Shown in pieces: positions 24,295-64,000 of a stretch of DNA of 64,000 nucleotides (position 1 is its first letter; every line of letters starts with the position of its first letter). The DNA comes from Rebecca billardiae RCC1528 (lineage: Eukaryota > Protista > Haptophyta), in contig OZ251247.1 of the NCBI GenBank assembly GCA_965240325.2, positions 620,001-684,000 of the forward strand. The letters are read 5' to 3'. Both the position numbers and the translations under genes were made by a program. The notes under the pieces were generated by a model. The model had not been told where the DNA came from. It ran no database searches and saw nothing but the letters and a program-made list of their open reading frames with translations.

Positions 24295-25842
24295 TCAGCT
24301 GATGGCGGTCCAGCTGCCCGGCTGTAGCGGCGGCGGCAGCTGGAGCTGCTCGATGCGCGTCGGCGGCCAGCTCAGGGGTTTGGCAGAACCCTCAGGCACA
24401 GAGGCCGCGCTCACGCCGAGGCCGAGCGCTGCCGACTGCAGGCCACACGCATAGACCGCGCCGTCAGCAGTGGTGTACAGCGCGTGGGTGCCACAGAGCG
24501 CGCAGTCCAGCACACTGCCTGCCTCGAAGGCCTGCACGCGCGCCGGCAGGAAGAGACGCCTGCTGTTACCAGGCGCAGAGAGCTGGCCGAACTCGTTGTC
24601 CCCGAACGTGTGCACGCTGCCGTCCGCGCCCAGCACCGCGCTGCTGTCAAAGCCAGCGCACGCGCGCACAGCGCGCACTCCCACCAGCGCTGGAATGGGG
24701 AAGGGCGTGAACGCAGATAATCGGCCACCGTGGCCGAGCTGCCCAGAGCGCCCAGACCCGAAGAAGTGCACCCCGCCCGCGGCGTCCACCACCAGGCTGT
24801 GCGTGTGGCCCGCGCTCGCGTGCACGGCGCGCACGCCCGCGAGCGCCTCGATGCGCCTCGGTGTGAGCTGCTCCCGCTCGCGGTCGTGGCCGAGCTGGCC
24901 AGAAGAGCCCCAGCCGCACGAGTAGACGGCGCCCTGCGCCGAGAGCAGCAGCGTGTGAGAATCGCCAGCTGCAACACCGCCCACGCGCACGCCGTCCAGT
25001 GCCTCGATGCGCGTCGGCTCCCACCGCTCCTCCGTGTCGCCGTGGCCGAGCTGGCCGCAGTAGTTGTAGCCCCAGCTGTACGCACAGCCCGCGGCGGTGA
25101 GCGCGAGGCTGTGGTAGTCGCCAGCAGCAATGCATACGACGAGCTGCGTCTCGACCCCCCGGACTTGTTCGAAACCCCACCGCGTGACAGTGTCACCCAG
25201 CCCCAGCTGGCCGCACTCGTTGTCGCCGCAGCCGTACACGGCGCCGGCCTGGCTCAGCGCGAGCAGGTGGGACCTGCCGGCGGCCACCGCGACCACGCGC
25301 ACCGCGCTCAGGGAGGCCACGCGCGTCGGCAGGAGCACCGTGTGCGCGTCCGGGTGGCCAGCTGCCGGGGATGCATGGTACTCGCCCGTGCCCTCCTCGT
25401 CCTCCTCGTCCTCGTCCTTCTCCTCGCCGCACGTGTGCAGCCCGCCCTCTGCGTCCACAAACGCGCTCAAATAAACGCCCGCGCCCGGAGTTGTCGCGAC
25501 GGCGTGCGCGTGCGCTCGCACGAGCGAGAGGACGGCCTCGCGCTGCATGAGTGCGTCCGTCCACGTGCAAGCATCCACGGGTAGGCTGGCCGGAAGGGCG
25601 CGCGCATGCCCGCGTGCGTGCGCGCGCTCGCGCAGCGCGTGCTCGACCGGCGAGCGGCCGCCGGGCTCGCCGCGGAAGAGGCGCGCCGTGGCGTTGGCGC
25701 GGACGATGGCAGGCAGCGCGGCGATTGACAGGATGCGCTCGATGATCTCGGGGGGCAAGCTCGCCAGCTGCCGACCCGCCGCCGCCGACGGCTCCAGCCG
25801 CGGGGGTGGCGCAGGGACGTCGGTCGTGGTGGTGCGCGCCAT
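24295..25842 (-). CDS. F-box-like + RCC1-repeat protein, copy 1 (515 aa, intronless)
   Basis: Start MARTTTTDV is shared with paralogues. LASLPPEIIERIL F-box-like motif; repeated RCC1 signature xAGxxHSLALT...YSWGxNxxGQLGHG...P.RIEAL. Confidence 0.9.
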   Translation of the reverse strand: MARTTTTDVPAPPPRLEPSAAAGRQLASLPPEIIERILSIAALPAIVRANATARLFRGEPGGRSPVEHALRERAHARGHARALPASLPVDACTWTDALMQREAVLSLVRAHAHAVATTPGAGVYLSAFVDAEGGLHTCGEEKDEDEEDEEGTGEYHASPAAGHPDAHTVLLPTRVASLSAVRVVAVAAGRSHLLALSQAGAVYGCGDNECGQLGLGDTVTRWGFEQVRGVETQLVVCIAAGDYHSLALTAAGCAYSWGYNYCGQLGHGDTEERWEPTRIEALDGVRVGGVAAGDSHTLLLSAQGAVYSCGWGSSGQLGHDREREQLTPRRIEALAGVRAVHASAGHTHSLVVDAAGGVHFFGSGRSGQLGHGGRLSAFTPFPIPALVGVRAVRACAGFDSSAVLGADGSVHTFGDNEFGQLSAPGNSRRLFLPARVQAFEAGSVLDCALCGTHALYTTADGAVYACGLQSAALGLGVSAASVPEGSAKPLSWPPTRIEQLQLPPPLQPGSWTAIS

Positions 25843-26148
25843 TCTCCGATCGCGTCGCCCTTCGGCCTTATTCCAAGAGTCGTTCAGTACGACAGCACTC
25901 TGGACTGTACTGTAAAGTAGCAAGGGCCGGTACTTATCATACGTACAGTAAGTCGTACAGTCGTAGTCGTAAGACAGACAGGCTCGGGTCGTAACTAGTA
26001 CAGTCGTACAGTACAGCAGTACAGCAGTGGAGCAGTGGCAGTGCGTGCTGCAGTGTTCAAGTGGCGATGCCCTGACCAGCACGACCCTACTCAATGATGA
26101 ACATGCCGTCACTACTGCCTAGCGCATGTCCGCACCCACAGGCCACAC

Positions 26149-27753
26149 TCAGCTGGCGCTCCGGCTGCCCAGCTGCAGCGGCGGCAGCTGCCCGATGCGC
26201 ATCGGCGGCCACCTCAAGCCCTCGGGCTCAGTGCCCGCGCTCGCACCGAGGCCGAGCGCTGCCGACTGCTTGCCGCACGCGTGCACGCTACCATCAGCGG
26301 TGACGTACAACGCGTGGGTGTCGCAGAGAACACAGTCCAGCACACGCGCTGACTCAAAGGCCTGGACCCGGAGCGGCAGCATTTGGCCAGAGGGTCCCGG
26401 CGGGCAGATTTGGCCGCTGCTGCTGTCCCCGAACACGTGCACGCTGCCGTCCGCGCCCAGCACCGCGCTGCTGTCAGGACCCGCGCACGCGCGCACCGCC
26501 TTGACACCCGCCAACGCCTCGATGCGCATGGGCACCAACGCCTCGATGCGCCCGGCCGCGCGCTCGGATGATTCGCCAGCGTGCCCAAGCTGGCCATGAT
26601 CGCCATGTCCAAACGAGTGCACGCTGCCCGCTGCGTCCACCACCAGGCTGTGCACATCGCCTACGCTCACGTGCACGGCGCGCACGCCCGCGAGCGCCTC
26701 GACGCGCTTCGGCGTGAGCTGCTCCCGCTCGCCGCCGTGGCCGAGCGAGCCCTGGCCACACGAGTAGACGGCCCCATCTGTTGAGAGCAGCAGAGTGTGC
26801 CCAAGCCCACCAGCCACTCCGCCCACGCGCACGCCGTCCAGCGCCTCGATGCGCGTCGGCTCCCACCGGTCCACCTCGTCGTCGTGGCCGAGCTGGCCGT
26901 ACGCGTTGTTGCCCCAGCTGTACGCGCGACCAGAAGCGGTGAGCGCGAGGCTGTGGACTGGGCCGGCGCCAATGCCCACGGCGGGCTCTGCGTCCAGGGC
27001 GGCCAGTGGCACCAACGCGTGTGTACCATCCGCATCGGCACCCAGCCCGAGCTGGCCCCACCCGTTCTCGCCGCAGGCGTACACCGCCCCAGCATCGCTC
27101 AGCGCGAGCAGGTGCCCGCAGCCTGCGGCCACCGCGACCACGCGCACAGCGGCGAGCGAGGCGACGCGCGTCGGCAGTGGCACCACCTCGTCTCCCGAGT
27201 GGCCGGCTGCCCGGGTTGCACGGTACTCGCCCGTGCCCAACCCGTCCTCGTCCCGCACCTCCTCCTCGCCGCACGTGTGCAGCCCGCCCTCCGCGTCCAC
27301 GAACGCGCTGAATACGGGGTTGCTCCAAGTGTGGTCGTTGCTCCAAGGGCTGCTCGCGACTGTGGTGCGGAAGCGGTCCTCCGAGCTCCCGCTTGTCGCG
27401 ACGGCGTGCGCGTGCGACCGCGCGAGCGAGAGGATGGCCTCGCGATGCATGAGTGCGTCCGTCCACGTGCACGCGTCCACGGGGAGTCGGGCCGGAAGGG
27501 CGCGCGCGTGCCCGCGCGCGCGCGCGCGGGCACGCAGCGCGTGCTCGACCGCCGAGCGGCCGCCGGGCGCGCCGCGGAAGAGGCGCGCCGTGGCGTTGGC
27601 GCTGACGATGGCAGGCAGCGAGGCCAACGACAGGACGCGCTCGATGATCTCGGGGGGCAGGCTCGCCAGCTGGAGCCCCGCCACCGCCGACGGCTCCAGC
27701 CGCGGGGGTGGCACGGAGACGTCGGTTGTAGTGGTCGCAGTGGTGCGCGCCAT
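26149..27753 (-). CDS. F-box-like + RCC1-repeat protein, copy 2 (534 aa)
   Basis: Same architecture, with a unique ~20-aa insertion (SSEDRFRTTVASSPWSNDHTWSNP) before FSAFVD. Confidence 0.9.
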   Translation of the reverse strand: MARTTATTTTDVSVPPPRLEPSAVAGLQLASLPPEIIERVLSLASLPAIVSANATARLFRGAPGGRSAVEHALRARARARGHARALPARLPVDACTWTDALMHREAILSLARSHAHAVATSGSSEDRFRTTVASSPWSNDHTWSNPVFSAFVDAEGGLHTCGEEEVRDEDGLGTGEYRATRAAGHSGDEVVPLPTRVASLAAVRVVAVAAGCGHLLALSDAGAVYACGENGWGQLGLGADADGTHALVPLAALDAEPAVGIGAGPVHSLALTASGRAYSWGNNAYGQLGHDDEVDRWEPTRIEALDGVRVGGVAGGLGHTLLLSTDGAVYSCGQGSLGHGGEREQLTPKRVEALAGVRAVHVSVGDVHSLVVDAAGSVHSFGHGDHGQLGHAGESSERAAGRIEALVPMRIEALAGVKAVRACAGPDSSAVLGADGSVHVFGDSSSGQICPPGPSGQMLPLRVQAFESARVLDCVLCDTHALYVTADGSVHACGKQSAALGLGASAGTEPEGLRWPPMRIGQLPPLQLGSRSAS

Positions 27754-27761
27754 CTGCCTGC

Positions 27762-29245: not shown

Positions 29246-29705
29246 GAATCTCCGCTTGCGCTGACGCGCCCAACAAACACGAACGCGACGCTTCGTTCGG
29301 CGACTGTCCGGTCGTTAAGACCCGGACTGCCACAGCCGCGTGTCCGAGCTGACTAGTATGTAACTACAGAGTATGACCGCGATCCGCGGTCCTTCCGTAG
29401 AACCAACGTAGTTAGGGGCCCGCGGTGCACCCTCCGTCGGCTGCTGTCTCAGTCTGGTCAACATGGCGGGCCGATGGCGATGAGGACCGTGTCGCCGCGG
29501 GCCCGCGCGAAGAAGTACGGACGGCGGCCGGGGCAGCGGCGCGCGCGCGCAGGGCGAGCCTGCCTTGAGATGCTCGCGCTGCGCCACGCGCTCGACGACG
29601 GGCCGCTGGTCGCTCAGCCGGCGCGCCTCGTGCCGGCAGAGCGACAGCGCGCACCACTCTGCTGGCCCCACCCCCAGCGGCCCCAGCCTGCGCTCACGGC
29701 GTCAG

Positions 29706-32104
29706 TAGGGGGTCCATCTGATTAAATCGAGTTTTGATTTCTTTTCTTTTCCTTTTCAGAACTTGTTCGGCGTGTTTTCGCGATCGGCAGATTCCAAATC
29801 CGCGCTCGGCTCGGCCCGGCGCGGGAGCGGAGCTCTGAACGGGGTCGGCAAGGCTGATGGCCCTCGTCGACGGCCGTCCGCTCGCCATTGGGCGCGCCCA
29901 CATCGGCGCAGGCGCCTCGCCGAGCGACTCGGTGGACACGGACACGTAGCCACGGTTCGTGTGGACCGGGCTCTCGCTGGGAGTCGCTGGCCAAACGACG
30001 CTCGTGCTTCATCATTTGAATCTGCGTGCTCGACGTGTCAGCTGCTCGCGACCAAGGAGCGCGTCCTAGGAGCACGTGCAGGAGAGCAATACGGAGACGA
30101 ACATGCGCAATATGGTGGGATGGGCATCGACAACGACTGGACACTGTCTCCTTCCCCACCCGTCGCTGCCATCTCGCCCTCGGACGTGCCCGCGACGCCT
30201 CTGCCGCAAGGGCCAGCTGCCGCCGACCAACTTGCGGACCGCTGTGCCGGGCATGACGAGGTCCAGGGCGCGGCAGATGATGATGCACGCGTGCCCATGG
30301 GTGTGTGCGACCCGCCCGAGGTCCCTGCCGGCACCGCCGAGGGGCTCGCCTCCTCCGCGGACGGCCTCGACTGTGAGCAACCGTGCAGGCCCGAACTACG
30401 GCCTGACGTCAACGTCAGCGCGCAGCAGCTCGAGGAGACGGCGGTGGCGGCGCGCGCCATCCACGTGCTACAGCCCTCGACCAGCTGGCGCGTGGCCGGC
30501 ACTCGCCCGCGGTACGCATCGGTGCTCGACTTCATGCTCCTCGACCACCTCCGCACGCTCGTGGTCTCGCGGAGCTCATGCTTGAGAACTCGAAGAAGCA
30601 CAAGCCGTTGGTCAGAGTGTTCACCCCTGCGTGCGCCCAGACCGCGCGCGACGGTCGGACGAAGAAGCCCAAGGCGCTCACGCTCGTCTGCGTGGATGCG
30701 CTCGGCATCTCGTTGCGCCACGACTCGCCGCGGCTCCGGAGGTGATCGGCATCTGGCTGATGACCGTGCACAGGTGGTGGAAGGGCAAGCACGAGGACAT
30801 GGAGCGCATCCTGAGCCGGAAGCAGGGCGCGTCGGCGGCGGAGAGGAAGGCGGAGCTGGATGTCGACGACACGTCGCTGGGCGCCGGCGACGACAGCTGC
30901 CCCTTCCGCGACCTCTACTCGCCCCCCGACGCCAGCGCGCCGCGCGCGTCCGCAGCAGGCCGCGTGCAGGTGCAGCTGCACGAGCAGCGCGTGACTCCTG
31001 CTGAGCACGCGATCATCTTGGAGCAGCAGGTGCGCCTGACGGAGCAGCAGGTGGAGCTGAACTCGTCGCGCAAGGCGATCGCGCGCGCCGTCGCCGACGC
31101 TGCGCGCGCCAGCTTGCGCGCCAACGCAACCGAGCGGGGGCACAGATCGAGCTGCGGCCGAGCGGGCTGCCATGGCTGCCGACTGCGCCGAGTTCGAGCG
31201 CGAGAGGAGAGCGGCGGAGCTCGAGGGCGAGCGCGCGGCGAAGCGCGCGCAGTCCGCCGCAGTACTGGTGGACCGGTGACGCCCTCGCGTGGGCTAGGGT
31301 ACGACGAACGGCGACGACGCCGGTGACACAGAGCACGGGCACGGAAGTCGCCGAACGGACCGCGGCAAGCTCGGCGGCGGCGACTGCTAGTCTGCGCACG
31401 CAAGCCTCGATGGCGGAGGACTCTCTCACGACTATGGGGATGGTGGCATGCTCAGAGGTGGGCTTGGTAGTGTGCTTCGGCACGCAGCCCGCCGCCCGCA
31501 TCAGGTCCGTCCGGGCCTGCTGCGGCACGGTTCGAGTGGCATGAGCCCGCCGTCTCCGCGCGGCGGCGCGGCCTATTCGGATGACCCAGCACGAATAGTG
31601 AACAAGGTACCCTCATATTGACAGCACCCTGAATATATATTTAAAACACACCCGCATTATATAATAAGCGGATATATATGCGCATATATATGGGTACGTG
31701 TCTCTAATTAAATGGGTAACATGCTCGATCTTGGAGTAGTTTTTCCTCGCCCTCTACGCGCACTCATCGTGCCTTCTAAAAATCAGCAATTCCGCCGTAA
31801 TTTTATTTGGGCGGGTTGCAACGGTTATGAATAAGTAAGTTCGGCGATATATATACCGTCATTTAGCCGCCATAACAAGTCGTTGACGTTTGGCTGAATC
31901 TGTATGTGACACAGTGGCGCAGCTGGCGTGCGCGCACGACCGCGCAACGACGCGCGGAGTCGGTTTTGGGTGCTTCTGACGGCTGGGCTGGGTTCCAGGA
32001 CATATTTGTGGGTGCCTCCGCAAGCGCCACGCTCGTCAGACACCTAATAAATCGCATGGTTGTCGAAAATCACACATCAGTGGGCTGCTGTCATGGACCC
32101 CCTA
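29706..32104. mobile_element. hAT-like element with TAGGGGGTCCAT TIRs carrying a degenerate, frameshifted ORF
   Basis: 12-bp perfect TIR at 29706-29717 and 32093-32104. CTCACGGCG is duplicated at 29693-29701 and 32105-32113, with 4 extra nt on the left. Broken reading frames at about 30110-31130 include a weak HTH-like segment (AAPEVIGIWLMTVHRWWKG). Confidence 0.7.
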
Positions 32105-33136
32105 CTCACGGCGCTGCGCAGCCGCGCACCGAGAGGCGAGACCGAGCGGAGCTCGGGGTGGAACGAGGCGAGCGGCGGGTCGCGCCTGCCGCCGCGCGTG
32201 CGCGCCTGCTCCACCGCGCCACCGTGCTCGCCCGCCGCCTCCTCCGCCGCGTCGGCCTCGAAGCCACGGCGGCGGCCAGCCAGCCTCCGACCGAGGCGGA
32301 GCCCGTGCGTGCTCACTCACCCGGCGCGGTGGCGCGGGCCGTGGCGCCCTCGAGTCGACGGCCGTCTACTCCACAGCTGGCTGCTCGAGCTGCTGCACGG
32401 GGCGTCGCGACGAGGGCGCCGCGCGCGCCCAGCGCGTCCGTCGCCGCGTCGCGCAGCGCGTCGAGCTCGGCGCCGCGCTTCGCCAGCTCGGCGCCCAGCG
32501 CCTCCGTGCGCACTCGTGCTCATTCGATTGTCGTCATTGACGCGCTCGTCGGCTCCGTGGCGAGCCCGCGGGGCGGACGAGCGGACTACTGCGCGCCGCA
32601 GCAGGAGCAGCGCGCGGTGCGCAGCACTCCGCGCGCAGCAGGGCCGTCTCCTCATCCACCGAGTGCACGGCCTGCGCGGCGGCGACGCGGCGGCGCGCGC
32701 CGCCGCGGGGGCGGACGCACGCGTTGCGGGCCGAGATGAGTCCGGCCGCCGAGCCGCGGTGGCGGCGTCGGCGTGCGCGCCGGGCGAGGTGGGCGAGCTC
32801 ACGCGGCCCGGGCTCAGCACGCCCGTGCACAGCGCCGGCCGCGGTGGCGAGCGCGCACCGCTCGGCCGCGGTGGCTTAAAACCGGCTGAGCGGTTGATGT
32901 TTGAAGCCGCGAGGTCAGCGACGTCTCCGATGACTCGGCCATGATTGTGGTCCTCCTTCGCCCACTGGTGCTTTGTCGACCATCCGCTGGAGGCGCGCCA
33001 ACGTCGGTACGGACAGCGCCTGCTTGAGCGTCGTGATGTGCATCAGCTCGAGCCGGCCGAAGATGGGCCCGCCGACGGCGATGATCATGATGTGCGCGCT
33101 TGCCGCTTGGGCACCCGTCCTCGTCGCGAGACGCTG

Positions 33137-34514: not shown

Positions 34515-34657
<143 letters not shown>

Positions 34658-44336: not shown

Positions 44337-44381
44337 ATCCAATATTACTACAGTACGTAGTATATATATATATATATATAT

Positions 44382-50698: not shown

Positions 50699-50850
<152 letters not shown>

Positions 50851-52435: not shown

Positions 52436-53938
52436 TCACAACGGCGGGAGGTGCTCGATACGCATCGGCGGCCACGTGGATTCGATCTCAGTCACAGTGG
52501 CCGTGCTCGCGCCGAGGCCGAGCGCAGCCGACCGCAAGCCGCACGCGTGCACTGCCCCGTCCGCTGTGACGTACAGCGCGTGGTTCTCAGACAGCGCGCA
52601 GTCAAGCACGCTCGTCGCTGACGCCAACTCGTGCATGCGCACCGGCAGCATCAGCTCCCAGGGAGCCGCGCCCGTCTGCCGAAGCTGGCCCCAACGGTTG
52701 TCCCCAAACGTGTGCGCGCTGCCGTCCGCTCCCAGCACTGCGCTGCTGTGAGCACCCGCACACGCACGCACCGCGCGCACGCCTGCCAGCGCAGCAATGG
52801 GCCTGGGTACTAGCTCGGATACGTCGGTACCGTGCCCAAACTGGCCAAACTGCCCCGACCCGAACGAGTGCACCCTGCCCACCGCGTCCACCACCAGGCT
52901 GTGCGCACAGCCCGCGCTCACGTGCACGGCGCGCACGCCCGCGAGTGCCTCGATGCGCCTCGGCGTGTGCTGATTCCGATGGTAGCCGTGGCCGAGCTCG
53001 CCAAAGTAGCCGTAGCCGCACGAGAAGACGGCGCCTTGTGCAGAGAGCAGTAGCGAGTGTATAGACGCTGCAGCCACGCCCCCCACGCGCACGCCGTCCA
53101 GCGCCTCGATGCGCGTCGGCTCCCACCGGTCCTCCGTGTCGCCGTGGCCGAGCTGGCCGCGGTGGTTGTAGCCCCAGCTGTACGCGCACCCAGCTGCGGT
53201 GAGCGCGAGGCTGTGGTGGCAGCCAGCGGCAATGCCCACGACGAGCTCGGCGTCCAGCGCAGGCAGTGGCAGGAATGCCAGTGCGTCGTCCGCCTGGTGA
53301 CCCAGCCCGAGCTGGCCCAAGTCGTTGCCACCGCAGCCGTACACTGTGCCAGCCTCGCTCAGCGCGAGCAGGTGGGCACGGCCAGCGGCCACGGAGCACA
53401 CGCGCACTGCGCTGAGCGAGGCGACGCGCGTGGGCTCGCGTGCCATGTCGGCACCCGTGACGCCAAGGGCGCGGGCAGGACGAACGTCCGCCCGCCCGTC
53501 CTCGTCCCACACCAGCTCCTCGCCGCACGTGTGCAGCCCGCCCTCCGCGTCCACAAACGCGCTGAACGACGAGAAAGGGTGGATGCGGCCGCCGATAGCC
53601 ACGGGCATCGCGTGCGCCCACGCCAGCTCATACACGTAGTCGCGGATGAACAGCTCCTCGGTCCACGTGCGCGCGCCCGCCGGCAGCTCGGTCGACAGCG
53701 CGCCAGCGTGCCCACGAGCACGAGCGCGCGCGCGCAGCGCGTGCTCGACCGGCGAGCGGCCGCCGGGCGCGCCGCGGAAGAGGCGTGCCGTGGCGTTGGC
53801 GCTGACGATGGCGGGCAGCGATGCGAACGACAGGATGCGCTCGATGATCTCAGGGGGCATGCTCGCCAGCTGCCGCGCCGCCGCCGCCGACGGGTCCAGC
53901 CGCGGCGGTGCAGTGTCGTCAGTAGTGATGATCGCCAT
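52436..53938 (-). CDS. F-box-like + RCC1-repeat protein, copy 6 (500 aa)
   Basis: Intact ORF, LASMPPEIIERIL plus RCC1 repeats. Confidence 0.92.
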   Translation of the reverse strand: MAIITTDDTAPPRLDPSAAAARQLASMPPEIIERILSFASLPAIVSANATARLFRGAPGGRSPVEHALRARARARGHAGALSTELPAGARTWTEELFIRDYVYELAWAHAMPVAIGGRIHPFSSFSAFVDAEGGLHTCGEELVWDEDGRADVRPARALGVTGADMAREPTRVASLSAVRVCSVAAGRAHLLALSEAGTVYGCGGNDLGQLGLGHQADDALAFLPLPALDAELVVGIAAGCHHSLALTAAGCAYSWGYNHRGQLGHGDTEDRWEPTRIEALDGVRVGGVAAASIHSLLLSAQGAVFSCGYGYFGELGHGYHRNQHTPRRIEALAGVRAVHVSAGCAHSLVVDAVGRVHSFGSGQFGQFGHGTDVSELVPRPIAALAGVRAVRACAGAHSSAVLGADGSAHTFGDNRWGQLRQTGAAPWELMLPVRMHELASATSVLDCALSENHALYVTADGAVHACGLRSAALGLGASTATVTEIESTWPPMRIEHLPPL

Positions 53939-55289: not shown

Positions 55290-55395
55290 CCGTCGGACCG
55301 CCGTTGTGGAGCCGCATCAGCGCTCCCGCACGGCGCCCCCCCTCGACTTCGAACTCGCTCCGGAGCGAGCGGTGGGGCGGAAGCTTGCGCGTGCG

Positions 55396-56946
55396 ATGAA
55401 GCGGCAGGCGGGCGCCGTCTCCCCCACGCTCGCGAGCATGCCGACCGACGTGATCGAGCGCATCGCTGCGTCGCTGCCCACGCCGCGCGATCTCGCCGCC
55501 GCCAACGCCACCTCGCGCCTCTTCCGCCGCGCGCCGCCCGGCGGCCGCTCGTCGGTCGAGCGCGCGCTGCGCGAGCGCGCCCACGCGCGCGGGCACACTC
55601 GCGCGCTGCCGCCGACGCTATTCGCGGGCACGTCCACTTGGACGGAAGAGCTCCTCGTGCGCGAGGCCACACTCGCCATGGCCCGCGCGCACGCTGCCGT
55701 CGTCGCGGGCGGCATTAACTTCAGCGCGTTTGTGGACGCGGAGGGCGGGCTGCACACGTGCGGCGAGGAGGAGGAGCGGGACGAACTCTGGCGTCGGACG
55801 GGCGAGTATCGGCCGCATTCGGCGGCGGGCCACACCGCCGTGCCCATCGCGCGCGTGCCGGTGCGCGTCGTCTCGCTGGCAGCGGTGCGCGTGCGTTCTG
55901 TGGCCGCTCGCGGTGACCACCTGCTCGCGCTGAGCGACGCCGGCGCTGTGTACGCGTGCGGCCACAACGACTTCGGCCAGCTTGGGCTGGGGAGCATCAG
56001 CAACCGGCGCGGCTTCCGCCCGATCGCTGCGCTGGCTGACGTCGTGGTGGTGTGCATCACCGCGGGCGGTTTGTACAGCCTCGCGCTCACCGCCGCGGGC
56101 TGTGCGTACAGCTGGGGCTTCAACTGCTACGGCCAGCTCGGCCACGGTGACAACGAGGAGCAGTGGGAGCCGACGCGCATCGAGGCGCTGGACGGCGTGC
56201 GCGTGGGTGGCCTGGCCGCGGGGCGCAACCACACGCTGCTTATGTCTGCGCACGGTGCCGTCTACTCGTGCGGCGATGGCAGCTGCGGCCAGCTCGGCCA
56301 CGGCGACGAGCAGGATCAGCACACGCCGAGGCGCATCGAGGCGCTCGCGGGCGTGCGCGCCGTGCACGTGAGCGCGGGCTGTGCGCACAGCCTGGTGGTG
56401 GACGGCGAGGGGGCGGTGTACGCGTTCGGACGGGCCGGCGGTGCGCATGCGCCGACGCTGCCGACGCGCATGTGGACGCTGGCTTGCGTGAGAGCGGTCA
56501 GCGCGAGCGCTGGCGATGCAAGCAGTGCGGTGCTGGGCGCAGACGGCAGCGTGCACACGTTCGGGAACGAGCACGGGCAGCTGGGCCTGGATGCCGCGTT
56601 TGCGCCGACCGCTCCAAGCCATGCTCGCGTGCTGGAGTGCACGTTCGGCTTTCGCCACACGCTCGTTGTCACCGCCGACGGCGCCGCGTACGCGTGCGGC
56701 CATCGGTCCGCTGCCGCTGCGCTCGGCCTCGGGCTGAGTGACCGCGGAGCCGACGAGACCGAGGCGGTGCTGTGGCGGTGGACGCCCGTGACGCGCATCG
56801 AGCAGCTGCCACGCCTACTGCCTGGCCTGCCCGGTGGCGGGTATTGCCGCGATGAGTCAGTCCGCATGGACGCATGGGGCAGCGCCACCCGCTGCTGGCT
56901 CTGTTATATCTCAGTGCAGCAGAGCCGCACGTATGCAAGCAGTTAA
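55396..56946 (+). CDS. F-box-like + RCC1-repeat protein, copy 7 (516 aa)
   Basis: LASMPTDVIERIAASLPTPRDLAAANATSRLFR plus RCC1 repeats; extended C-terminus. Confidence 0.9.
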   Translation: MKRQAGAVSPTLASMPTDVIERIAASLPTPRDLAAANATSRLFRRAPPGGRSSVERALRERAHARGHTRALPPTLFAGTSTWTEELLVREATLAMARAHAAVVAGGINFSAFVDAEGGLHTCGEEEERDELWRRTGEYRPHSAAGHTAVPIARVPVRVVSLAAVRVRSVAARGDHLLALSDAGAVYACGHNDFGQLGLGSISNRRGFRPIAALADVVVVCITAGGLYSLALTAAGCAYSWGFNCYGQLGHGDNEEQWEPTRIEALDGVRVGGLAAGRNHTLLMSAHGAVYSCGDGSCGQLGHGDEQDQHTPRRIEALAGVRAVHVSAGCAHSLVVDGEGAVYAFGRAGGAHAPTLPTRMWTLACVRAVSASAGDASSAVLGADGSVHTFGNEHGQLGLDAAFAPTAPSHARVLECTFGFRHTLVVTADGAAYACGHRSAAAALGLGLSDRGADETEAVLWRWTPVTRIEQLPRLLPGLPGGGYCRDESVRMDAWGSATRCWLCYISVQQSRTYASS

Positions 56947-57961: not shown

Positions 57962-59464
57962 TCAGGACGAGCCCACCCGCCTCAGGGGTGGCAGCTCCGT
58001 GACGCGAGTGGGCGTGCGCCGGTCCGCCGTCCCGTGCTCCCGGCTCAGCCCAAGCCCGAGCGCCGCCGACTGTGAGCCGCTCGAATAGGCGGCGCCATCC
58101 GCGGTGACGAACAGCGCGAGGTCGCGGCTGGGCGCGCAGCCCACCACGCGCTCGTGTGAGAGGGCCGCCACGCGCGCCGGGGGCTGGAGGGCGGTGTAGC
58201 CGGCCCCCCGCACGAGCCCGCTGCAGACCCCCAGCGTGTGCACGCTGCCGTCCGCGCCCAGCACCACGCTGCCCCTATTGCCGGCGCGTGCGCGCACAGC
58301 GCGCACGCGTGCGAGCGACTCGACGGGTGCGGGCGCCGGCCAGTCGACACCCTGCGCTTCGGGGCACAGGCACGCGCCCGAGCCGAACGCGTGCACGGCC
58401 CCCTCGTCGTCCACCACCAGGCTGTGCCACACGCCCGCGCTCACGTGCACGGCGCGCAGGCCCGCGAGCGCCTCGATGCGCCTCGGCGTGTGCTGATGCT
58501 GCCGGTCGCCGTGGCCGAGGCGGCCTAGATGCCCGCCGCCGCAGGAGTAGACGGCGCCATGCGCGGCGAGCACGAGGACGTGTGCCATGCCGGCGGACAC
58601 TCCGCCGACGCGCACGCCGCGCAGCGCCTCGATGCGCGTCGGCTCCAACCGGTCCTCCGTGTCGCCGTGGCCGAGCTGGCCGCAGCTGTTGTGGCCCCAG
58701 CTGTACACGCAGCCATCCACACTGGAAGCAAAGCTGTAGGCTGCCCCAGCTGCGATGCACGCGGTAGTCTCGGGGGAGACCGCCCCATCCAGCCGCACGA
58801 AGCCATGGCGGGGCGCCGTGTCGCCCAGCCCGAGCTGCCCGTACTCGTTCTCGCCACAGCCGTACACAGCGCCAGCCTCGCTCAGCGCGAGCAGGTGGTC
58901 CCAGCCAGCGGCCACCGCGACCACGCGCACTGCGCTGAGCGAGGGCACGCGCGTGGGCACGGGGACAGGTGGGACGCTCGCGCGCGCCGCTGAGTGGCCC
59001 AGTGCCGTGGGTGCGCACCACACGCGCACGGCGGGCTCCTCGTCCCCCACCGCCTCCTCGCCGCACGTGTGCAGCCCGCCCTCCGCGCCCACAAACGCGC
59101 TGAACGCCAGCTTGGAGGTGCGGCTCGCGGCGGCCACGCGTGCGTGCGCGCATGCGAGCGCGGTGATTCGCTCGCGCACGAGCAGCTCCTCTATCCACGT
59201 GCACGCGTCCGTGGGTAGCGTCTCCGGAAGGGCGGAGTGGTGGCCGCGCGCATGCGCGCGCTCGCGCAGCGCGTGCTCGACAGGCGAGCGCCGCCCAGGA
59301 GCGCCACGGAAGAGGCGAGAGGCGGCGCTTGCGCTGACAATGGCCGACAGCGGCATGGCCAGCACGATGCGCTCGATGATATCCACGGGCATGTCCGTGA
59401 GCGTCCGCCCCGCCGCGTCGGAGGTGGATGATGGCGGTAGGGGGGTGACGCCGGCGGCCGCCAT
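57962..59464 (-). CDS. F-box-like + RCC1-repeat protein, copy 8 (500 aa)
   Basis: LTDMPVDIIERIV plus RCC1 repeats. Confidence 0.92.
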   Translation of the reverse strand: MAAAGVTPLPPSSTSDAAGRTLTDMPVDIIERIVLAMPLSAIVSASAASRLFRGAPGRRSPVEHALRERAHARGHHSALPETLPTDACTWIEELLVRERITALACAHARVAAASRTSKLAFSAFVGAEGGLHTCGEEAVGDEEPAVRVWCAPTALGHSAARASVPPVPVPTRVPSLSAVRVVAVAAGWDHLLALSEAGAVYGCGENEYGQLGLGDTAPRHGFVRLDGAVSPETTACIAAGAAYSFASSVDGCVYSWGHNSCGQLGHGDTEDRLEPTRIEALRGVRVGGVSAGMAHVLVLAAHGAVYSCGGGHLGRLGHGDRQHQHTPRRIEALAGLRAVHVSAGVWHSLVVDDEGAVHAFGSGACLCPEAQGVDWPAPAPVESLARVRAVRARAGNRGSVVLGADGSVHTLGVCSGLVRGAGYTALQPPARVAALSHERVVGCAPSRDLALFVTADGAAYSSGSQSAALGLGLSREHGTADRRTPTRVTELPPLRRVGSS

Positions 59465-59641
59465 TGGTGCGTCGTCCGCCAGGCGGGGACCGGTCGCCGA
59501 TTCACAGCCGCCCGCGCCCAGTTCCGGGTGGCTTGGTCCGGTGGTGGTGGTGGTGACGAGCTGACGAACGCTTCCGCATCAAGCCGGCTGATGACTAGTC
59601 CCGACGCACCAACTCACACGCATCTAGCTACGCAAGGTACG

Positions 59642-61174
59642 CTAAACGGCTTCGCACAGCAGCGACGGCAGCTGATGGATGCGCTCGGGCACGTCCACGC
59701 CGTCTCCGTCGTTCAACAGCGGCTCGTCAGCGGTGCTCACGCCAAGCCCGAGCGCTGCCGACTGCTTGCCGCACGAGTACGCTGCGCCGTCCGCTGTCAC
59801 AAACAGCGCGTGCTCAGGGCCGAGTGCGCAGGAGACCACGCGCGCGTGCGCCAGCGCGTGCACGCTCGCCCCCGGGAGCACCTTCCGCGCGCCGTGCCCG
59901 CGCTGCAGCCCCAGCCGACCGCTCCGGTTGTAGCCGAACGCGTGCACGCTGCCGTCCGCGCCCAGCACCGCGCTCGCACGGTGCGCTGAGCACGCGCGCA
60001 CGGCGCGCACGCCCGCGAGCGCGTCCATGCGGCGCGGCGTGAGCCGTCTCGGGTCGTCGATGCTGCCGCCCAGGCACGCGCCCGGGCCGCACGAGTACAC
60101 CGCGCCGCCCGCGTCCACCACCACGCTGTGCCAGTCGCCCGCGCTCACGTGCACGGCGCGCACGCCCGCGAGCGCCTCGATGCGCCTCGGCGTGTGCCGC
60201 TGCTGCTGGTCGCCGTGGCCGAGCCGGCCGTGTTGGCCGTCGCCGCACGAGTAGACGGCGCCGCTGGTCGAGAGGAGCAGCGTGTGGACGCCGCACGCGC
60301 TCACGCCGCCCACGCGCACGCCGTCCAGCGCCTCGATGCGCGTCGGCTCCCGCCGCGCCTTCCTGTCGCCGTGGCCGAGCTGGCCGCACTCGTTGCGGCC
60401 CCAGCTGTACGCGCAGCCGGCCGCGGTGAGGGCGAAACTTTGAAGGCAGCCCGCTGCAATGCACACGACGGGCTGGGGCTCCAAGCCGCGCACGAGCTCG
60501 AACACCTCGCGGACGTCCCGCCCCCCGAGCCCGAGCTGGCCGTTCCCGTTCTCGCCGCAGCCGTACACCGTCCCGGCCTCGCTCAGCGCCAGCAGGTGAA
60601 GGCGCCCTGCGGCCACAGAGCGCACGCGCACCGCGGAGAGCGAGGCCACGCGGGTCGGCACGCGCACGGGCGGCGCCGCGGGTCCGTCGTCGTGGCCGAG
60701 CGCGAGAGGGGCGACGCGCTCCGTCAGCGCGTCCCCGTCCTCCTCCTCCTCGGCGTAGTCGTCGTCGTCCTCCTTCTCCTCGCCGCACGTGTGCAGCCCG
60801 CCGTCCGCGTCCACAAACGCGCTCAAGCCCACCTCCTCCTCCATCCCGCCCGCGGCCACGGCCAGCGCGTGAGTGCGCGCGAGCGCGAGGACGGCTTCGT
60901 GGTGTAGCAGCTCCTCGGTCCACGTGCGCACGCCGTCCGGCAGCGCGGCCAGAAGGGCGCGAGCGTGCCCGCGCGCGCGCGCGCGCTCGCGCAGTGCGTG
61001 CTCGACCGGCGAGCGGCCGCCGGGCGCGCCGCGGAAGAGGCGCGAGGTGGCGTTGGCGGCGGCGATGGCACGCAGCGACTGTGCGAACAGAATGCGCTCG
61101 ATGATCTCGGCGGGCAGGTCCGCCAGCTGCCGTGGCGCTGAGGAGGGCTCGTCGCCCTCGCTTGATGTCGTCAT
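59642..61174 (-). CDS. F-box-like + RCC1-repeat protein, copy 9 (510 aa)
   Basis: LADLPAEIIERIL plus RCC1 repeats; long acidic loop EEKEDDDDYAEEEEDGD. Confidence 0.92.
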   Translation of the reverse strand: MTTSSEGDEPSSAPRQLADLPAEIIERILFAQSLRAIAAANATSRLFRGAPGGRSPVEHALRERARARGHARALLAALPDGVRTWTEELLHHEAVLALARTHALAVAAGGMEEEVGLSAFVDADGGLHTCGEEKEDDDDYAEEEEDGDALTERVAPLALGHDDGPAAPPVRVPTRVASLSAVRVRSVAAGRLHLLALSEAGTVYGCGENGNGQLGLGGRDVREVFELVRGLEPQPVVCIAAGCLQSFALTAAGCAYSWGRNECGQLGHGDRKARREPTRIEALDGVRVGGVSACGVHTLLLSTSGAVYSCGDGQHGRLGHGDQQQRHTPRRIEALAGVRAVHVSAGDWHSVVVDAGGAVYSCGPGACLGGSIDDPRRLTPRRMDALAGVRAVRACSAHRASAVLGADGSVHAFGYNRSGRLGLQRGHGARKVLPGASVHALAHARVVSCALGPEHALFVTADGAAYSCGKQSAALGLGVSTADEPLLNDGDGVDVPERIHQLPSLLCEAV

Positions 61175-61267
61175 CAGTACTACTTAGTCAAGCAACTGCG
61201 GCGGTCCCCGCCAGCAGCCGCCGCCGCCATCGTGTTCCGCACGACCCGGACGATCGATCGCGAAGAG

Positions 61268-62767
61268 ATGGCGGCACCACCAGCATCGGCGACGACGCGC
61301 ACGCGTCCCGCGGCTCCCGCGGGAGCGCAGCGGCTGACCGACCTGCCGCCCGAGCTCGTCTCGCGCATCCTTGCCCACTTTGACGACGTTGGCGACCTCG
61401 TTGCCGCCAACGCCGCCTCTCGCCTCTTCCGCGGCGCGCCGCTCGAGCACGCGCTGCGCGAGCGGGCGCGCGCGCGCGGGCACTCGCATGCGCTGCCCAC
61501 GACGCTGCCCGCGGGCGCGCGCACGTGGACGGAGGAGCTGCTCGCCCGCGAGCGCGTGCACGAGCTCGCGTGCGGGCACGGCCAGGTCGTCGTCGCAGTT
61601 GGCACCGATGATCACCCGTTCAGCGCGTTTGTGGACGCGGACGGTGGCGTGCACACCTGTGGCGAGCCGCCGGGCCAAGTCGAACTCTCGCGGCGGGAGC
61701 GTAGCGCCTTGGCCTGGCGAGTATTCGCAGCAATGCGACACGCAGCCTGCTCGCCGCATCCGACGCGCGTGACCTCACTCTCGGCGGTGCGCGTGCGTTC
61801 TGTGGCCGCTGGCTATGACCACCTGCTCGTGCTGAGCGAGGCCGGTGCCGTGTACAGCTGCGGCGAGAACGAGTACGGCCAGCTGGGGCTCGGCCATCGG
61901 GCGGAGGACGCGCATGTGTTCGTGCCGTTGCCCGCGCTGGACGCCGAGCTCGTCGTGGCCATCGCCGCGGCTGGCCTTCACAGCCTCGCGCTCACCGCCG
62001 CGGGCTGTGCGTACAGCTGGGGCTACAACAGGGACGGCCAGCTCGGCCACGGCGACAGGAAGCACCGGTGGGAGCCGACGCGCATCGAGGCGCTCGACGG
62101 CGTGCGCGTGGGCGGCGTTGCAACTGGGGATGGACACACGCTACTGCTCTCGGCGCAAGGCGCGGTCTACTCGTGCGGCTGGGGCTACAAGGGCCGTCTC
62201 GGCCACGGCGACGAGCAGGAGCAGCACACGCCGAGGCGCATCGAGGCGCTCGCGGGCGTGCGCGCCGTGCACGTGAGCGCGGGCGAAGCGCACAGCCTGG
62301 TGGTGGACGCGGAGGGCGGCGTGTGCTCGTTCGGCTTTGGCCGCAACGGCGAGCTTGGGCACGGCGACGACCTTGACCAGGAGATGCCCACGCCCATCGA
62401 GGCGCTGGCGGGTGTGCGCGCCGTGCGCGCGTGTGCAGGCCATTGCAGCAGCGCGGTGCTGGGCGCGGACGGCAGCGTGCACACGTTCGGCGACAACAGT
62501 ACTGGGCAGCTCGGCCGGACATCGTCCCACCCGGTGGTCAACGCGCAGCCCGCGCGGCTGCACGCCCTCTCACACGCGTGCGTGCTGGGGTGCTCGCTCA
62601 GCAACTCCCACGCGCTGTACGCCACAGCGGACGGCGGTGCGTACGCGTGTGGGCGGAAGGTGGCCGCGCTCGGCCTCGGCGTGAACGACCTGGTCGACCC
62701 GCAAGCAAAGCAGCGGACGCCGCAGCGCGTGGCGCAGCTGCCGCCCCTTGCAGGCACGCTCCGCTGA
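61268..62767 (+). CDS. F-box-like + RCC1-repeat protein, copy 10 (499 aa)
   Basis: LTDLPPELVSRILAHFDDVGDLVAANAASRLFR, the best F-box match in the family, plus RCC1 repeats. Confidence 0.92.
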   Translation: MAAPPASATTRTRPAAPAGAQRLTDLPPELVSRILAHFDDVGDLVAANAASRLFRGAPLEHALRERARARGHSHALPTTLPAGARTWTEELLARERVHELACGHGQVVVAVGTDDHPFSAFVDADGGVHTCGEPPGQVELSRRERSALAWRVFAAMRHAACSPHPTRVTSLSAVRVRSVAAGYDHLLVLSEAGAVYSCGENEYGQLGLGHRAEDAHVFVPLPALDAELVVAIAAAGLHSLALTAAGCAYSWGYNRDGQLGHGDRKHRWEPTRIEALDGVRVGGVATGDGHTLLLSAQGAVYSCGWGYKGRLGHGDEQEQHTPRRIEALAGVRAVHVSAGEAHSLVVDAEGGVCSFGFGRNGELGHGDDLDQEMPTPIEALAGVRAVRACAGHCSSAVLGADGSVHTFGDNSTGQLGRTSSHPVVNAQPARLHALSHACVLGCSLSNSHALYATADGGAYACGRKVAALGLGVNDLVDPQAKQRTPQRVAQLPPLAGTLR

Positions 62768-63043
62768 GCACGCGTACGCGGGTGCAGCAGGATGCACACC
62801 GCCATGATGAGCAGCCTGAGCCCCCTGAGTGCAGTGCCACACACTCCCCTAGCTGCTGCTTCTCTCCAACCCCCTGCTCAGCACTACAGTACGTAAGCTA
62901 CAGTCTTCCGGTCGTAGTACAGTAGGCGTAAGTACGTACACTACGGTGGTACCGCGGGTATCCTTAGGTCGAGCAGTGCGCACGCTTACTCAATGATGTG
63001 CGACCAACCGCCAGCGCGCAGCACCCTCCGGCTCGGAGCGGAG

Positions 63044-64000
63044 ATGGCACCAGCAGCATCGGCGACGACGCGCACGCGTGCCGCGGCGCCCCCGGGTGTG
63101 CGGCGGCTGACCGACCTGCCGCCCGAGCTCGTCTCGCGCATCCTCTCTCATCTGGATTGCGCGTGTGACCTCGCCGCCGCCAACGCCGCCTCGCGCCTCT
63201 TTCGCGGCGCGCCGCTCGAGCACGCGCTGCGCGAGCGGGCGCGCACGCGCGGCCACGCCCGCGCTGCCTGAGACGCTGCCCGCGGGCGCGCGCACGTGGA
63301 CGGAGGAGCTGCTCGCCCGTGAACGCGTGTACGAGCTTGCATGCGAGCACGGGCAGGTCGTGGTCGCTGCTGGCACCGATGATCACCCGTTCAGCGCGTT
63401 TGTGGACGCGGACGGCGGCGTGCACACCTGTGGCGAGCCGCCGGGCCAAGTCGAACTCTCACGGCGGGAACGCAAGGCCTTGGCCGGGGGAGTATTCGCT
63501 TTAATGCGACACGCAGCCTGCTCGCCGCATCCGACGCGCGTGGCCTCGCTCAGCGCAGTGCGCGTGCGTTCTGTGGCCGCTGGCTGGGCCCACCTGCTCG
63601 CGCTGAGCGAGGCTGGCGCCGTGTACGCGCGCGGCCACAACGACTACGGCCAGCTGGGGCTGGGTCACCAGGCGGAGGACGCGCATGCGTTCGTGCCACT
63701 GCCTGCGCTGGACGCCGCGCTCGTTGTGGGCATTGCCGCTGGCCCCCTTCACAGCCACGCGCTCACCGCCGCTGGGTGTGCATACAGCTGGGGCAACAAC
63801 TACTGCGGCCAGCTCGGCCACGGCGACAAGGACCGGTGGGAGCCGACGCGCATCGAGGCGCTGCGCGGCGTGCGCGTGGGTGGGATCGCAGCAGGGGTAG
63901 CCCACACGTTGCTTCTCTCGACCAGCGGCGCCGTCTACTCGTGCGGCCGCGGCCAGCACGGCCAGCTCGGCCACGGCGACCAGCAGCAGCGGTATGCGCT
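63044..64000 (+). pseudogene. F-box-like + RCC1 copy 11; frameshift near 63262, runs off window
   Basis: Close paralogue of copy 10. A 2-nt loss in a GC run (ggccacgcccgcgctgcctgag) creates TGA at 63269-63271, and the family frame resumes afterwards. Could be an assembly error. Confidence 0.75.

What the first reader, a model, noticed from the sequence alone, without database searches (positions are those of the whole stretch)
24295..64000. Array of 11 intronless F-box-like/RCC1-propeller genes: candidate diversified ubiquitin-ligase receptor repertoire
Seen: 11 paralogues of ~500 aa in 40 kb, in both orientations, all intronless although neighbours such as EIF4A3 have 9 introns. Three are disrupted (birth-and-death pattern) and they are interleaved with transposons. 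Each has LxxLPxEIIxRIL...ANATxRLFR at the N-terminus, then RCC1 blades. Known: F-box motifs bind Skp1 in SCF E3 ligases and the C-terminal domain selects substrates; expanded, clustered, fast-evolving F-box families in nematodes and plants are proposed to target foreign proteins. Inference: an algal intracellular surveillance system (for example against giant viruses) that uses RCC1 propellers as variable binders. I do not know of such a system being described in this lineage.
Basis: partly seen in the sequence, partly recalled or inferred. Interest (0 to 1): 0.88.

Follow-up and report, generated by a model that had tools for sequence, protein, structure and literature searches.

The report
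Hypervariable F-box/RCC1 propeller gene array
A very GC-rich, probably haptophyte alga carries here 11 of several hundred intronless genes for likely ubiquitin-ligase adaptors; their propeller framework is kept, while a few loop residues on one face differ in every copy, as in a recognition repertoire whose targets are unknown.

Summary
The window has 11 intronless paralogues of about 500 aa: 8 intact and 3 broken, 8 on the - strand and 3 on the + strand. They are separated by high-copy dispersed repeats.

The scan has already reported this family on other DNA of the same genome, in at least 9 other windows. Genome-wide there are at least 150 full N-terminal modules, from about 600 first-look candidates. 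Two thirds of the scored ones lie on this 1.18-Mb contig.

- **F-box call.** Window copies score below the Pfam cut-off. Paralogues pass it, and 80 of 131 outside relatives are clear F-boxes.
- **Skp1 docking.** The motif docks on the genome's single Skp1 in a controlled complex prediction: 0.86 against a best control of 0.02. This shows likeness, not binding.
- **Hypervariable sites.** They were defined on 20 copies outside the window. In the window copies they evolve at about twice the local synonymous rate, against about 0.45 for the scaffold.
- **Position on the fold.** They align to the interface Trp/Arg positions of UVR8.

Expression could not be checked because no RNA run was listed. 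The immune or antiviral role remains speculation. I class this as a new variant of a known kind (expanded F-box receptor families; FBXO24 architecture).

The parts
24295..25842 (-). c1, intact F-box/RCC1 gene (515 aa plus stop)
   Evidence: 75% identical to c4
26149..27753 (-). c2, intact (534 aa)
   Evidence: WD40_RLD E 1.1e-72
36311..37800 (-). c3, disrupted. A frameshift between 36485 and 36540 replaces the last blade; the open frame 36370-37800 gives 477 aa.
   Evidence: two HSPs in different frames; identity collapses after codon ~420
37950..39497 (-). c4, intact reference copy (515 aa), folded and docked
39327..39422 (-). F-box-like motif of c4 (residues 26-57)
   Evidence: Pfam F-box-like 26-57, E 0.14. 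Predicted Skp1 contacts lie in residues 24-60.
39162..39314 (-). Conserved helical linker of c4 (residues 62-112; motif SPVEHALRERARARGH...TWTEEL)
   Evidence: Invariant columns E67, A69, L70, R73, R77, H79; helices 65-76 and 94-110; the whole ~90-residue module recurs in 132 outside representatives
38088..39155 (-). Seven-bladed RCC1-like propeller of c4 (residues 115-470). Hypervariable residues include 188-189, 205, 207-208, 240-241, 257, 259-260, 292-293, 309, 311-312, 346-347, 363, 365, 398-399, 415 and 417.
39775..41259 (-). c5, disrupted by an in-frame TGA at 40681-40683 (codon 193, consensus Cys)
52436..53938 (-). c6, intact (500 aa)
55396..56946 (+). c7, intact (516 aa). Its nearest relatives lie about 300 kb away on the same contig.
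57962..59464 (-). c8, intact (500 aa)
59642..61174 (-). c9, intact (510 aa)
61175..61267 (.). 93-bp head-to-head spacer between the start codons of c9 and c10
   Evidence: gene models; sequence
61268..62767 (+). c10, intact (499 aa). It has the best F-box-like score in the window (E 0.012).
63044..64000 (+). c11, disrupted by a frameshift near 63240. It runs past the window end to about 64394, where the C-terminus is also lost.
29703..32105 (.). Dispersed 2.4-kb repeat between copies (at least 25 copies, 93-99% identical, on many contigs)
   Evidence: no Pfam domain in its ORFs
34758..35900 (.). Dispersed 1.14-kb repeat (at least 12 copies, 98-100% identical)
42139..44341 (.). Composite dispersed repeat (parts 1-449 and 922-2198 occur in at least 40 copies at 93-98%). 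A second copy lies at 48240-49951.
48240..49951 (.). Second copy of the same repeat, 98-99% identical to 42139-44341

Best explanation
Each gene encodes a substrate receptor of an SCF (Skp1-cullin-F-box) ubiquitin ligase, built from three parts.

- **F-box.** A diverged F-box (c4 residues ~26-57) docks on the single Skp1.
- **Linker.** A strongly conserved helical linker (~62-112) holds the propeller in place.
- **Propeller.** A seven-bladed RCC1-like propeller presents one face where two or three residues per blade differ in every paralogue. These are the xx of AAGxxH and the x positions of GxNxxGQLG.

Tandem duplication, occasional gene loss and diversifying selection on that face produce a germline repertoire of several hundred binders. 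Each presumably delivers a different target for ubiquitination.

Shown here: the gene anatomy, the family size, F-box homology, the RCC1 fold and the site-specific rate pattern. Predicted only: Skp1 docking. Inferred: ubiquitination of targets, and what those targets are.
For: F-box:
- 26 of 29 N-termini of the family hit Pfam F-box-like.
- 6 of 10 paralogues re-scanned pass the cut-off, at 24.4-28.3 bits against 24.3. One also passes PF00646.
- The N-terminal profile retrieves 132 outside representatives. Of the 131 scanned, 80 are F-box-like (best 5e-16), 33 are F-box (best 1e-17) and 68 carry RCC1 domains.

Skp1:
- The genome has one Skp1 and several cullins.
- Complex prediction gave score 0.86 in three runs against a best control of 0.02. 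That mark was reached by 51 of 78 solved complexes and 2 of 108 mismatched pairs.
- The runs agree in at least 74% of contacts, and the partner's pLDDT is at least 64.
- The interface joins partner residues 24-60 to the C-terminal helices of Skp1.

Propeller:
- Pfam RCC1-like domain at E 1e-57 to 1e-73.
- AF2 model pLDDT 86.8 and pTM 0.88.
- Foldseek puts UVR8 first (TM 0.84-0.91), then the HERC2/HERC1 RLDs.

Hypervariability:
- Entropy peaks recur blade by blade, at the same columns in window and non-window copies.
- With sites defined on the 20 non-window copies, dN(HV)/dS(gene) is 1.6-3.9 in all 36 window pairs, against 0.34-0.72 for the scaffold.
- Four independent pairs give 2.07 (1.62-2.58), and 2.19 (1.60-3.05) against the synonymous rate of flanking codons.
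- Codons differing at one base split 548 nonsynonymous to 81 synonymous at HV sites, against 1967 to 2566 in the scaffold.
- HV sites align to UVR8's GWRHT Trp/Arg and loop Trp positions.
- They are enriched in D, Y, W, K, N and Q.
Against: - No window copy reaches the Pfam F-box cut-off itself (11.5-15.8 bits). Only the first ~32 of 47 profile positions match.
- The N-terminal profile finds no solved F-box chain.
- The isolated N-terminal model is poor (pLDDT 65) and has no fold match.
- The complex pass may come from memory of solved Skp1-F-box complexes. Skp1 was supplied as two exon pieces, without its first coding exon.
- Measured against the synonymous rate of the HV codons themselves, omega is 0.91 (0.63-1.36). 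I read that as a multi-hit path artefact, but the result is method-dependent.
- Third-position identity oscillates along the gene, so gene conversion of scaffold segments may distort dS.
- There is no expression evidence.
- Long ORFs arise easily at GC3 0.87, so intactness alone is weak evidence.
Confidence: 0.7

Rival explanations
1. The molecular mechanism is the same (an SCF receptor repertoire), but its role is specifically intracellular immunity. Each propeller recognises proteins of giant viruses or other parasites and sends them to the proteasome.
For: - Diversifying selection on one binding face, family size, clustering and pseudogenes are the hallmarks of arms-race families.
- Nematode F-box families with the same pattern have been read this way (Thomas 2006, as described in PMC12062965).
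- Haptophytes are hosts of giant viruses (my own knowledge).
Against: Nothing here links any copy to a foreign protein. No expression data exist, and no viral partner was sought. The same signature fits mating or self-recognition, or conflict with selfish elements.
Confidence: 0.25
2. The repertoire serves self/non-self or genetic-conflict recognition inside the species. Examples are mating or gamete compatibility in the manner of plant S-locus F-box genes, or control of toxin-antidote or transposon proteins. It does not serve pathogen defence.
For: - About two thirds of the best-scoring copies sit on one 1.18-Mb contig. That resembles a specialised or non-recombining region.
- Copies are interleaved with young dispersed repeats.
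- Collaborative non-self recognition by clustered F-box genes is known in plants (my own knowledge).
Against: No mating-type genes or candidate partner genes (for example RNases) were seen among the spacers examined. Copies also occur on at least 20 other contigs.
Confidence: 0.15
3. The N-terminal motif is a decayed F-box that no longer recruits Skp1. The proteins act as stand-alone RCC1-like binders or regulators (UVR8-, RCC1- or RLD-like), or the family is a largely neutral birth-and-death expansion with unconstrained loops.
For: - Window copies are below the Pfam cut-off, and the third helix of the F-box is not matched.
- N-terminal omega is only moderately low, at 0.4-0.9.
- Omega at HV codons is about 0.9 against their own dS.
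- 3 of 11 copies are broken.
- No transcripts are known.
Against: - The L-P...hydrophobic pattern and the following linker are the most conserved part of the protein across paralogues and 132 outside relatives.
- The docking score is far above the controls.
- Scaffold omega of 0.42-0.5 shows purifying selection.
- HV omega is about 2.2 against flanking synonymous sites, which exceeds neutrality.
Confidence: 0.1

Closest known systems
FBXO24 (mammalian F-box only protein 24)
   Same: The domain order is the same: an N-terminal F-box followed by an RCC1 repeat domain. FBXO24 co-precipitates with SKP1, CUL1 and RBX1 and drives ubiquitination of a substrate (PMC10932545). An Atlas feature search lists its cluster among the nearest (score 0.81, a lead only).
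   Different: FBXO24 is a single conserved gene with a testis function. It is not a clustered, intronless family of hundreds with hypervariable loops. Orthology was not tested.
Expanded F-box receptor families of Caenorhabditis (A1/A2/B, with FTH or FBA2 domains) and of plants
   Same: These are large, lineage-specific, clustered families. The substrate-binding domain shows positive selection while the F-box is under purifying selection (Thomas 2006, as summarised in PMC12062965).
   Different: The variable module here is an RCC1 propeller with blade-periodic variable positions, not FTH, FBA or Kelch/LRR. Only one Skp1 gene was found, whereas nematodes and plants have many Skp1 paralogues (my own knowledge). 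The lineage is an alga.
UVR8 (plant UV-B photoreceptor)
   Same: It is the closest solved fold (TM 0.84-0.91, 26-28% identity). The hypervariable pairs align to the Trp/Arg of its GWRHT motifs and to its loop Trp residues. In UVR8 these form the dimer and partner interface (my own knowledge).
   Different: UVR8 has no F-box and is single-copy. Its interface residues are conserved, not variable, and here the Trp triad is absent.
RCC1-like domains (RLDs) of the HECT ligases HERC1/HERC2
   Same: An RCC1-type propeller is used as a partner- or peptide-binding module of a ubiquitin ligase. These are the second-best fold matches (for example 7q41, RLD2 bound to a DXDKDED peptide).
   Different: The ligase class differs: HECT, as one giant polypeptide, against a modular SCF. 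There is no family expansion or hypervariability.
S-locus F-box (SLF/SFB) gene clusters of plants
   Same: Many clustered, diverged F-box genes act together as a recognition repertoire (my own knowledge).
   Different: The C-terminal domain is different (FBA). The known target (S-RNase) has no counterpart seen here.

Membership tests
F-box proteins (Pfam PF12937 / PF00646) | Sequence match to the F-box profile above the curated cut-off, in the window copies themselves | tested here: not met
   The window copies score 11.5-15.8 bits (E 0.012-0.27) against a cut-off of 24.3. F-box-like is still the only recurring N-terminal hit.
F-box proteins (Pfam PF12937 / PF00646) | Homology of the family's N-terminal module to F-box, shown through paralogues and outside relatives aligned in the same columns | tested here: met
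   - 26 of 29 paralogue N-termini hit PF12937.
- 6 of 10 re-scanned pass the cut-off (24.4-28.3 bits), and one passes PF00646 at 21.5 against 20.5.
- 80 of 131 outside relatives found with the module's profile are F-box-like (best 5e-16), and 33 are F-box (best 1e-17).
F-box proteins (Pfam PF12937 / PF00646) | Three-helix F-box fold | tested here: inconclusive
   The full-length model has helices at 31-39 and 43-57, with pLDDT 57-83. The isolated N-terminus folds poorly (pLDDT 65, pTM 0.33) and has no Foldseek match. A profile search of PDB sequences found nothing.
F-box proteins (Pfam PF12937 / PF00646) | Binding to Skp1 | not testable with these tools
   Prediction only. The score was 0.86 in three runs against a best control of 0.02. 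The interface joins residues 24-60 to the C-terminal helices of Skp1. The tool's mark was reached by 51 of 78 solved complexes and 2 of 108 mismatched pairs. The pass may come from memory of solved complexes.
RCC1-like domain proteins (PF25390 / PF00415) | Repeated RCC1 blades above the curated cut-off, forming a seven-bladed propeller | tested here: met
   - WD40_RLD scores 195-249 bits against a cut-off of 150.
- RCC1 scores 152-214 bits against 21.7.
- The AF2 model has pLDDT 86.8.
- UVR8, HERC2 and RCC1 are the fold matches, at E 1e-33 to 1e-23.
SCF ubiquitin ligase system | Skp1 and cullin genes present in the same genome | tested here: met
   There is one Skp1 locus on C5 (101 bits against a cut-off of 22.3). 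Cullin matches lie on C29, C15 and C5. Rbx1 was not searched.
Diversifying F-box receptor repertoires (nematode or plant type) | Large lineage-specific clustered expansion with pseudogenes | tested here: met
   - At least 150 full N-terminal modules scored, from 599 first-look candidates.
- 38 copies in a systematic 200-kb sample.
- Paralogues are 55-77% identical, against at most 52% for any outside protein.
- 3 of 11 copies here are broken.
Diversifying F-box receptor repertoires (nematode or plant type) | Positive selection confined to the substrate-binding domain | tested here: met
   With sites defined on independent copies, omega(HV) is 2.07 (1.62-2.58) against gene-wide dS and 2.19 (1.60-3.05) against flanking dS. 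The scaffold gives 0.42-0.5. Caveat: the value is 0.91 against the HV codons' own dS. No likelihood codon model was run and recombination was not corrected for.
Diversifying F-box receptor repertoires (nematode or plant type) | Targets are foreign or conflict-related proteins; copies are expressed | not tested
   No RNA run was listed, and no partner was sought.

The most novel reading that the evidence does not exclude
One small chromosome-sized contig (1.18 Mb) of a haptophyte-type alga is given over to roughly 200 F-box/RCC1 genes, and several hundred exist genome-wide. All would feed a single Skp1. Together they would form a germline-encoded, antibody-like intracellular recognition system that marks proteins of giant viruses or other parasites for degradation. 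This would be an innate immune strategy not described in algae.
Probability: 0.2. Interest if true: 0.9.

Novelty: new variant of a known kind. Interest (0 to 1): 0.68.

Why it matters
Expanded F-box families are suspected immune receptors in nematodes and plants, but their targets remain largely unknown. This case offers a very large family with a rigid, well-modelled propeller. Variation is confined to about 30 positions on one face, and the organism has a single Skp1. Specificity could therefore be read and swapped loop by loop. Marine algae of this type are infected by giant viruses that shape blooms, so a link to viral proteins would reveal a new arm of eukaryotic microbial immunity. The propeller could also serve as a natural scaffold for engineered targeted protein degradation.

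Tried and rejected
- **RNA evidence.** The look-up of sequencing runs (kind rna) listed no run, so read laying could not be used. Expression and the reality of the frameshifts remain unchecked.
- **PDB sequence search.** The N-terminal profile gave only a chance hit, ExoY at E 1.3.
- **Isolated N-terminal fold.** The AF2 model was of low confidence, and Foldseek found nothing below E 2.7. This is uninformative, not negative.
- **Exact look-up.** The c4 protein is not on record in public assemblies.
- **Outside relatives.** Cluster look-up of the best ones gave no names or taxa. The closest one, P0001, comes from two Logan assemblies with no annotation.
- **Whole-contig fetch.** The contig map therefore rests on a 200-kb systematic sample plus the search lists.
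- **Transposon claim.** No transposase, RT or integrase domain was found in ten spacer ORFs. The repeats are real but unclassified.
- **Shared promoter.** No motif was common to the upstream 150 bp of all copies.
- **Literature.** Searches for an algal or haptophyte F-box/RCC1 family found nothing relevant. Several hits were false, because 'RCC' strain numbers match 'RCC1'.
- **Giant-virus insertion.** I considered and rejected this origin. GC3 (0.87) and overall GC match the host, an intronless relative sits among ordinary genes in Emiliania huxleyi, and the copies are far more diverged than the surrounding repeats.

Full report
**Setting.** The window is G000:C31:620001-684000, from a 72-Mb assembly of 41 contigs. 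GC is 55-75%. The best named outside relatives are from Emiliania huxleyi. The nearest Atlas clusters are mostly Haptophyta (a lead only). I therefore call the organism a very GC-rich, probably haptophyte alga; this is not proven.

The scan had already reported this gene family on other DNA of the same genome, in at least nine other windows. Those notes concluded 'hypervariable F-box/RCC1 array'. One of them stated that targets, expression and Skp1 binding were open. I re-tested the core claims on this window and went for those gaps.

**Observation.** tblastn with one copy finds 11 copies between 24295 and the window end.
- Eight are intact single ORFs of 499-534 aa.
- c3 has a frameshift between 36485 and 36540 that replaces the last blade.
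- c5 has a TGA at 40681-40683, at an otherwise invariant Cys codon.
- c11 has a frameshift near 63240 and a second lesion beyond the window.
- Eight copies lie on the - strand and three on the + strand.

Spacers between consecutive genes can be as short as 93-310 bp. The array continues downstream, with three more copies in the next 9 kb. The eIF4A3-like neighbour (about 20000-23500, -) is split into exons, so the lack of introns is a real contrast.

The larger gaps hold dispersed repeats present in at least 12 to at least 40 copies at 93-100% identity on many contigs. No transposase or RT domain was found in their ORFs.

Many overlapping ORFs of 200 aa or more lie in other frames. These are the usual by-product of high GC.

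**Family size.** The full-length protein gives 720 first-look candidates in the genome. All 84 that were scored are full length at 58-77% identity. The N-terminal profile gives 599 candidates. All 150 that were scored have E below 1e-33 and no stops. By my count from that list, 100 are on C31, 16 on C34, 9 on C35, 5 on C27 and the rest are scattered. The profile was built from C31 copies, which biases this ranking.

A systematic sample of twenty 10-kb stretches from the first 390 kb of C31 holds 38 copies, about one per 5 kb. Matches run from 3.6 kb to 1.14 Mb of the 1.18-Mb contig. About 200 copies on C31 is an extrapolation, not a count.

**F-box.**
- In the window copies, Pfam F-box-like is the only recurring N-terminal hit. 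It stays below the cut-off, at 11.5-15.8 bits against 24.3.
- Across 29 family N-termini, 26 hit it.
- Six of ten re-scanned paralogues pass the cut-off. One of them is the copy just downstream of the window that is sister to c10. One also passes PF00646.
- A profile of the first 100 residues retrieves 132 representatives out of 1.84 billion proteins, usually matching over about 90 residues.
- Of the 131 scanned, 80 are F-box-like (best 5e-16), 33 are F-box (best 1e-17) and 68 carry RCC1 domains.

The module is thus an F-box plus a family-specific conserved linker. The window copies are diverged members. The match covers only the first ~32 of 47 profile positions.

**Skp1.** The genome has one Skp1 locus and several cullin loci. 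The gene is spliced. I used two exon pieces by reference, as separate chains, and did not join them. The short first coding exon was not found.

The complex prediction scored 0.86 in each of three runs, against a best control of 0.02. That mark was reached by 51 of 78 solved complexes and 2 of 108 mismatched pairs. The runs agree in at least 74% of their contacts, and the partner's pLDDT is at least 64. Contacts run from partner residues 24-60 to residues 56-119 of the second Skp1 piece, which are its C-terminal helices.

As the tool warns, this job is unlike its calibration, and a pass for a family with solved complexes shows likeness, not binding.

**Propeller and hypervariable face.** The AF2 model of c4 has pLDDT 86.8 and pTM 0.88. 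It shows helices at 31-39, 43-57, 65-76 and 94-110, followed by seven blades. UVR8 is the closest solved fold (TM 0.84-0.91). The HERC2/HERC1 RLDs, RPGR and RCC1 follow.

Column entropy is near zero over most of the propeller. It peaks at the same few positions of every blade: the two residues between AAG and H, and three positions in GxNxxGQLG. This holds in both window and non-window copies.

By strand topology, these two loops lie on the same face. In a phmmer alignment they match the Trp/Arg of UVR8's GWRHT motifs and its loop Trp residues. In UVR8 these form the interface (my own knowledge). Every copy has its own residue signature there, enriched in D, Y, W, K, N and Q.

**Selection.** To avoid circularity, I defined 43 hypervariable columns on the 20 non-window copies and measured rates in the window copies.

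| Measure | Value |
|---|---|
| dN(HV)/dS(gene), all 36 window pairs | 1.6-3.9 |
| Scaffold omega, same pairs | 0.34-0.72 |
| N-terminus omega, same pairs | mostly 0.4-0.9 |
| omega(HV), four independent pairs, gene-wide dS | 2.07 (bootstrap 1.62-2.58) |
| omega(HV), HV codons' own dS | 0.91 (0.63-1.36) |
| omega(HV), flanking codons' dS | 2.19 (1.60-3.05) |

The apparent dS of the HV codons is 0.87, against 0.34 for the scaffold. Two checks suggest this is mostly a multi-hit path artefact.
- Codons within three positions of an HV site have dS 0.40.
- Among codon pairs differing at a single base, HV sites show 548 nonsynonymous to 81 synonymous changes, against 1967 to 2566 in the scaffold.

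Third-position identity oscillates along the gene in register with the blades, and is higher at the 5' end within the c1-c4 group. Gene conversion of scaffold segments is therefore likely, and it complicates any dS-based test. I rate diversifying selection as supported but not settled. No likelihood codon model was available.

**History.** A tree on scaffold columns puts c1-c6 in one local clade and c8 with c9. It places c10 with the next two copies downstream, and c7 with copies about 300 kb away. Paralogues are closer to each other than to any outside protein, where the best match is 52%. This argues against a conserved one-to-one orthologous set, within the limits of a database that may withhold near relatives. 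The E. huxleyi relative is a single intronless gene among unrelated genes.

**Comparison with the known.**
- The F-box+RCC1 architecture exists in mammalian FBXO24, which binds SKP1/CUL1/RBX1 (PMC10932545).
- Large, clustered F-box families with positive selection in the substrate domain are known from nematodes and plants (Thomas 2006, as described in PMC12062965).
- I found no paper describing such a family in haptophytes or other algae. The library is incomplete.

What differs here is the propeller as the variable module, with blade-periodic variable sites at UVR8-interface positions. The scale, the concentration on one small contig, and a single Skp1 also differ.

**Verdict.** The molecular reading, an SCF receptor repertoire with a variable propeller face, is well supported in silico (confidence 0.7). 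The immune reading is untested (about 0.25). The finding is a new variant of a known kind, and the scan has seen it repeatedly in this genome.

Noticed in passing
window:46029-47840 (-): A 603-aa ORF sits between the two copies of the 2-kb repeat. It has no Pfam hit. Atlas features place it near fucosyltransferase-type glycosyltransferase clusters (GT11, O-FucT, FUT8, NodZ) at scores 0.91-0.94. It is probably an ordinary host gene, not a transposon.
   Followed up: partly
window:61175-61267: Only 93 bp separate the divergent start codons of c9 and c10. Head-to-tail neighbours are 150-310 bp apart. That leaves very little room for promoters and UTRs, so shared or bidirectional control, or co-transcription, is possible. 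No motif common to all upstream regions was found.
   Followed up: partly
G000:C31 (whole contig, 1.18 Mb): 100 of the 150 best-scoring N-terminal modules of the genome lie on this one contig, which is 1.6% of the assembly. They are spread from 3.6 kb to 1.14 Mb, at about one gene per 5 kb in a systematic sample. The contig may be a specialised 'outlier' chromosome. The ranking is biased, because the profile was built from C31 copies.
   Followed up: partly
window copies c1-c4 and c10 with L001:5151-6632, along the coding sequence: Third-codon-position identity rises to 86-97% in scaffold segments (for example codons 241-270 and 316-345). It falls to 40-63% in segments that hold the variable loops. 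This suggests short-tract gene conversion of the framework, or nucleotide-level constraint.
   Followed up: partly
window:34517-34654 and 50700-50842: Two long perfect (AT)n microsatellites of about 140 bp lie in the spacers of an otherwise 65-75% GC region.
   Followed up: no
window:42139-44341: This copy of the dispersed repeat carries a ~470-bp insert (query 450-921) that is missing from most of the 40+ other copies. The insert occurs separately elsewhere, so this is a nested insertion.
   Followed up: no
window:~20000-23500 (-): An eIF4A3-like DEAD-box helicase gene is split into several exons. Motifs seen include VIDEADEML and [13 protein letters not shown]. The last exon ends ...[12 protein letters not shown].
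   Followed up: partly
L002:1054-1653 (G000:C5): The single Skp1 gene is spliced. The in-frame ATG is not in the exon that starts at 1054, so a short upstream coding exon must exist. It was not located.
   Followed up: partly
I did not examine it.
   Followed up: no
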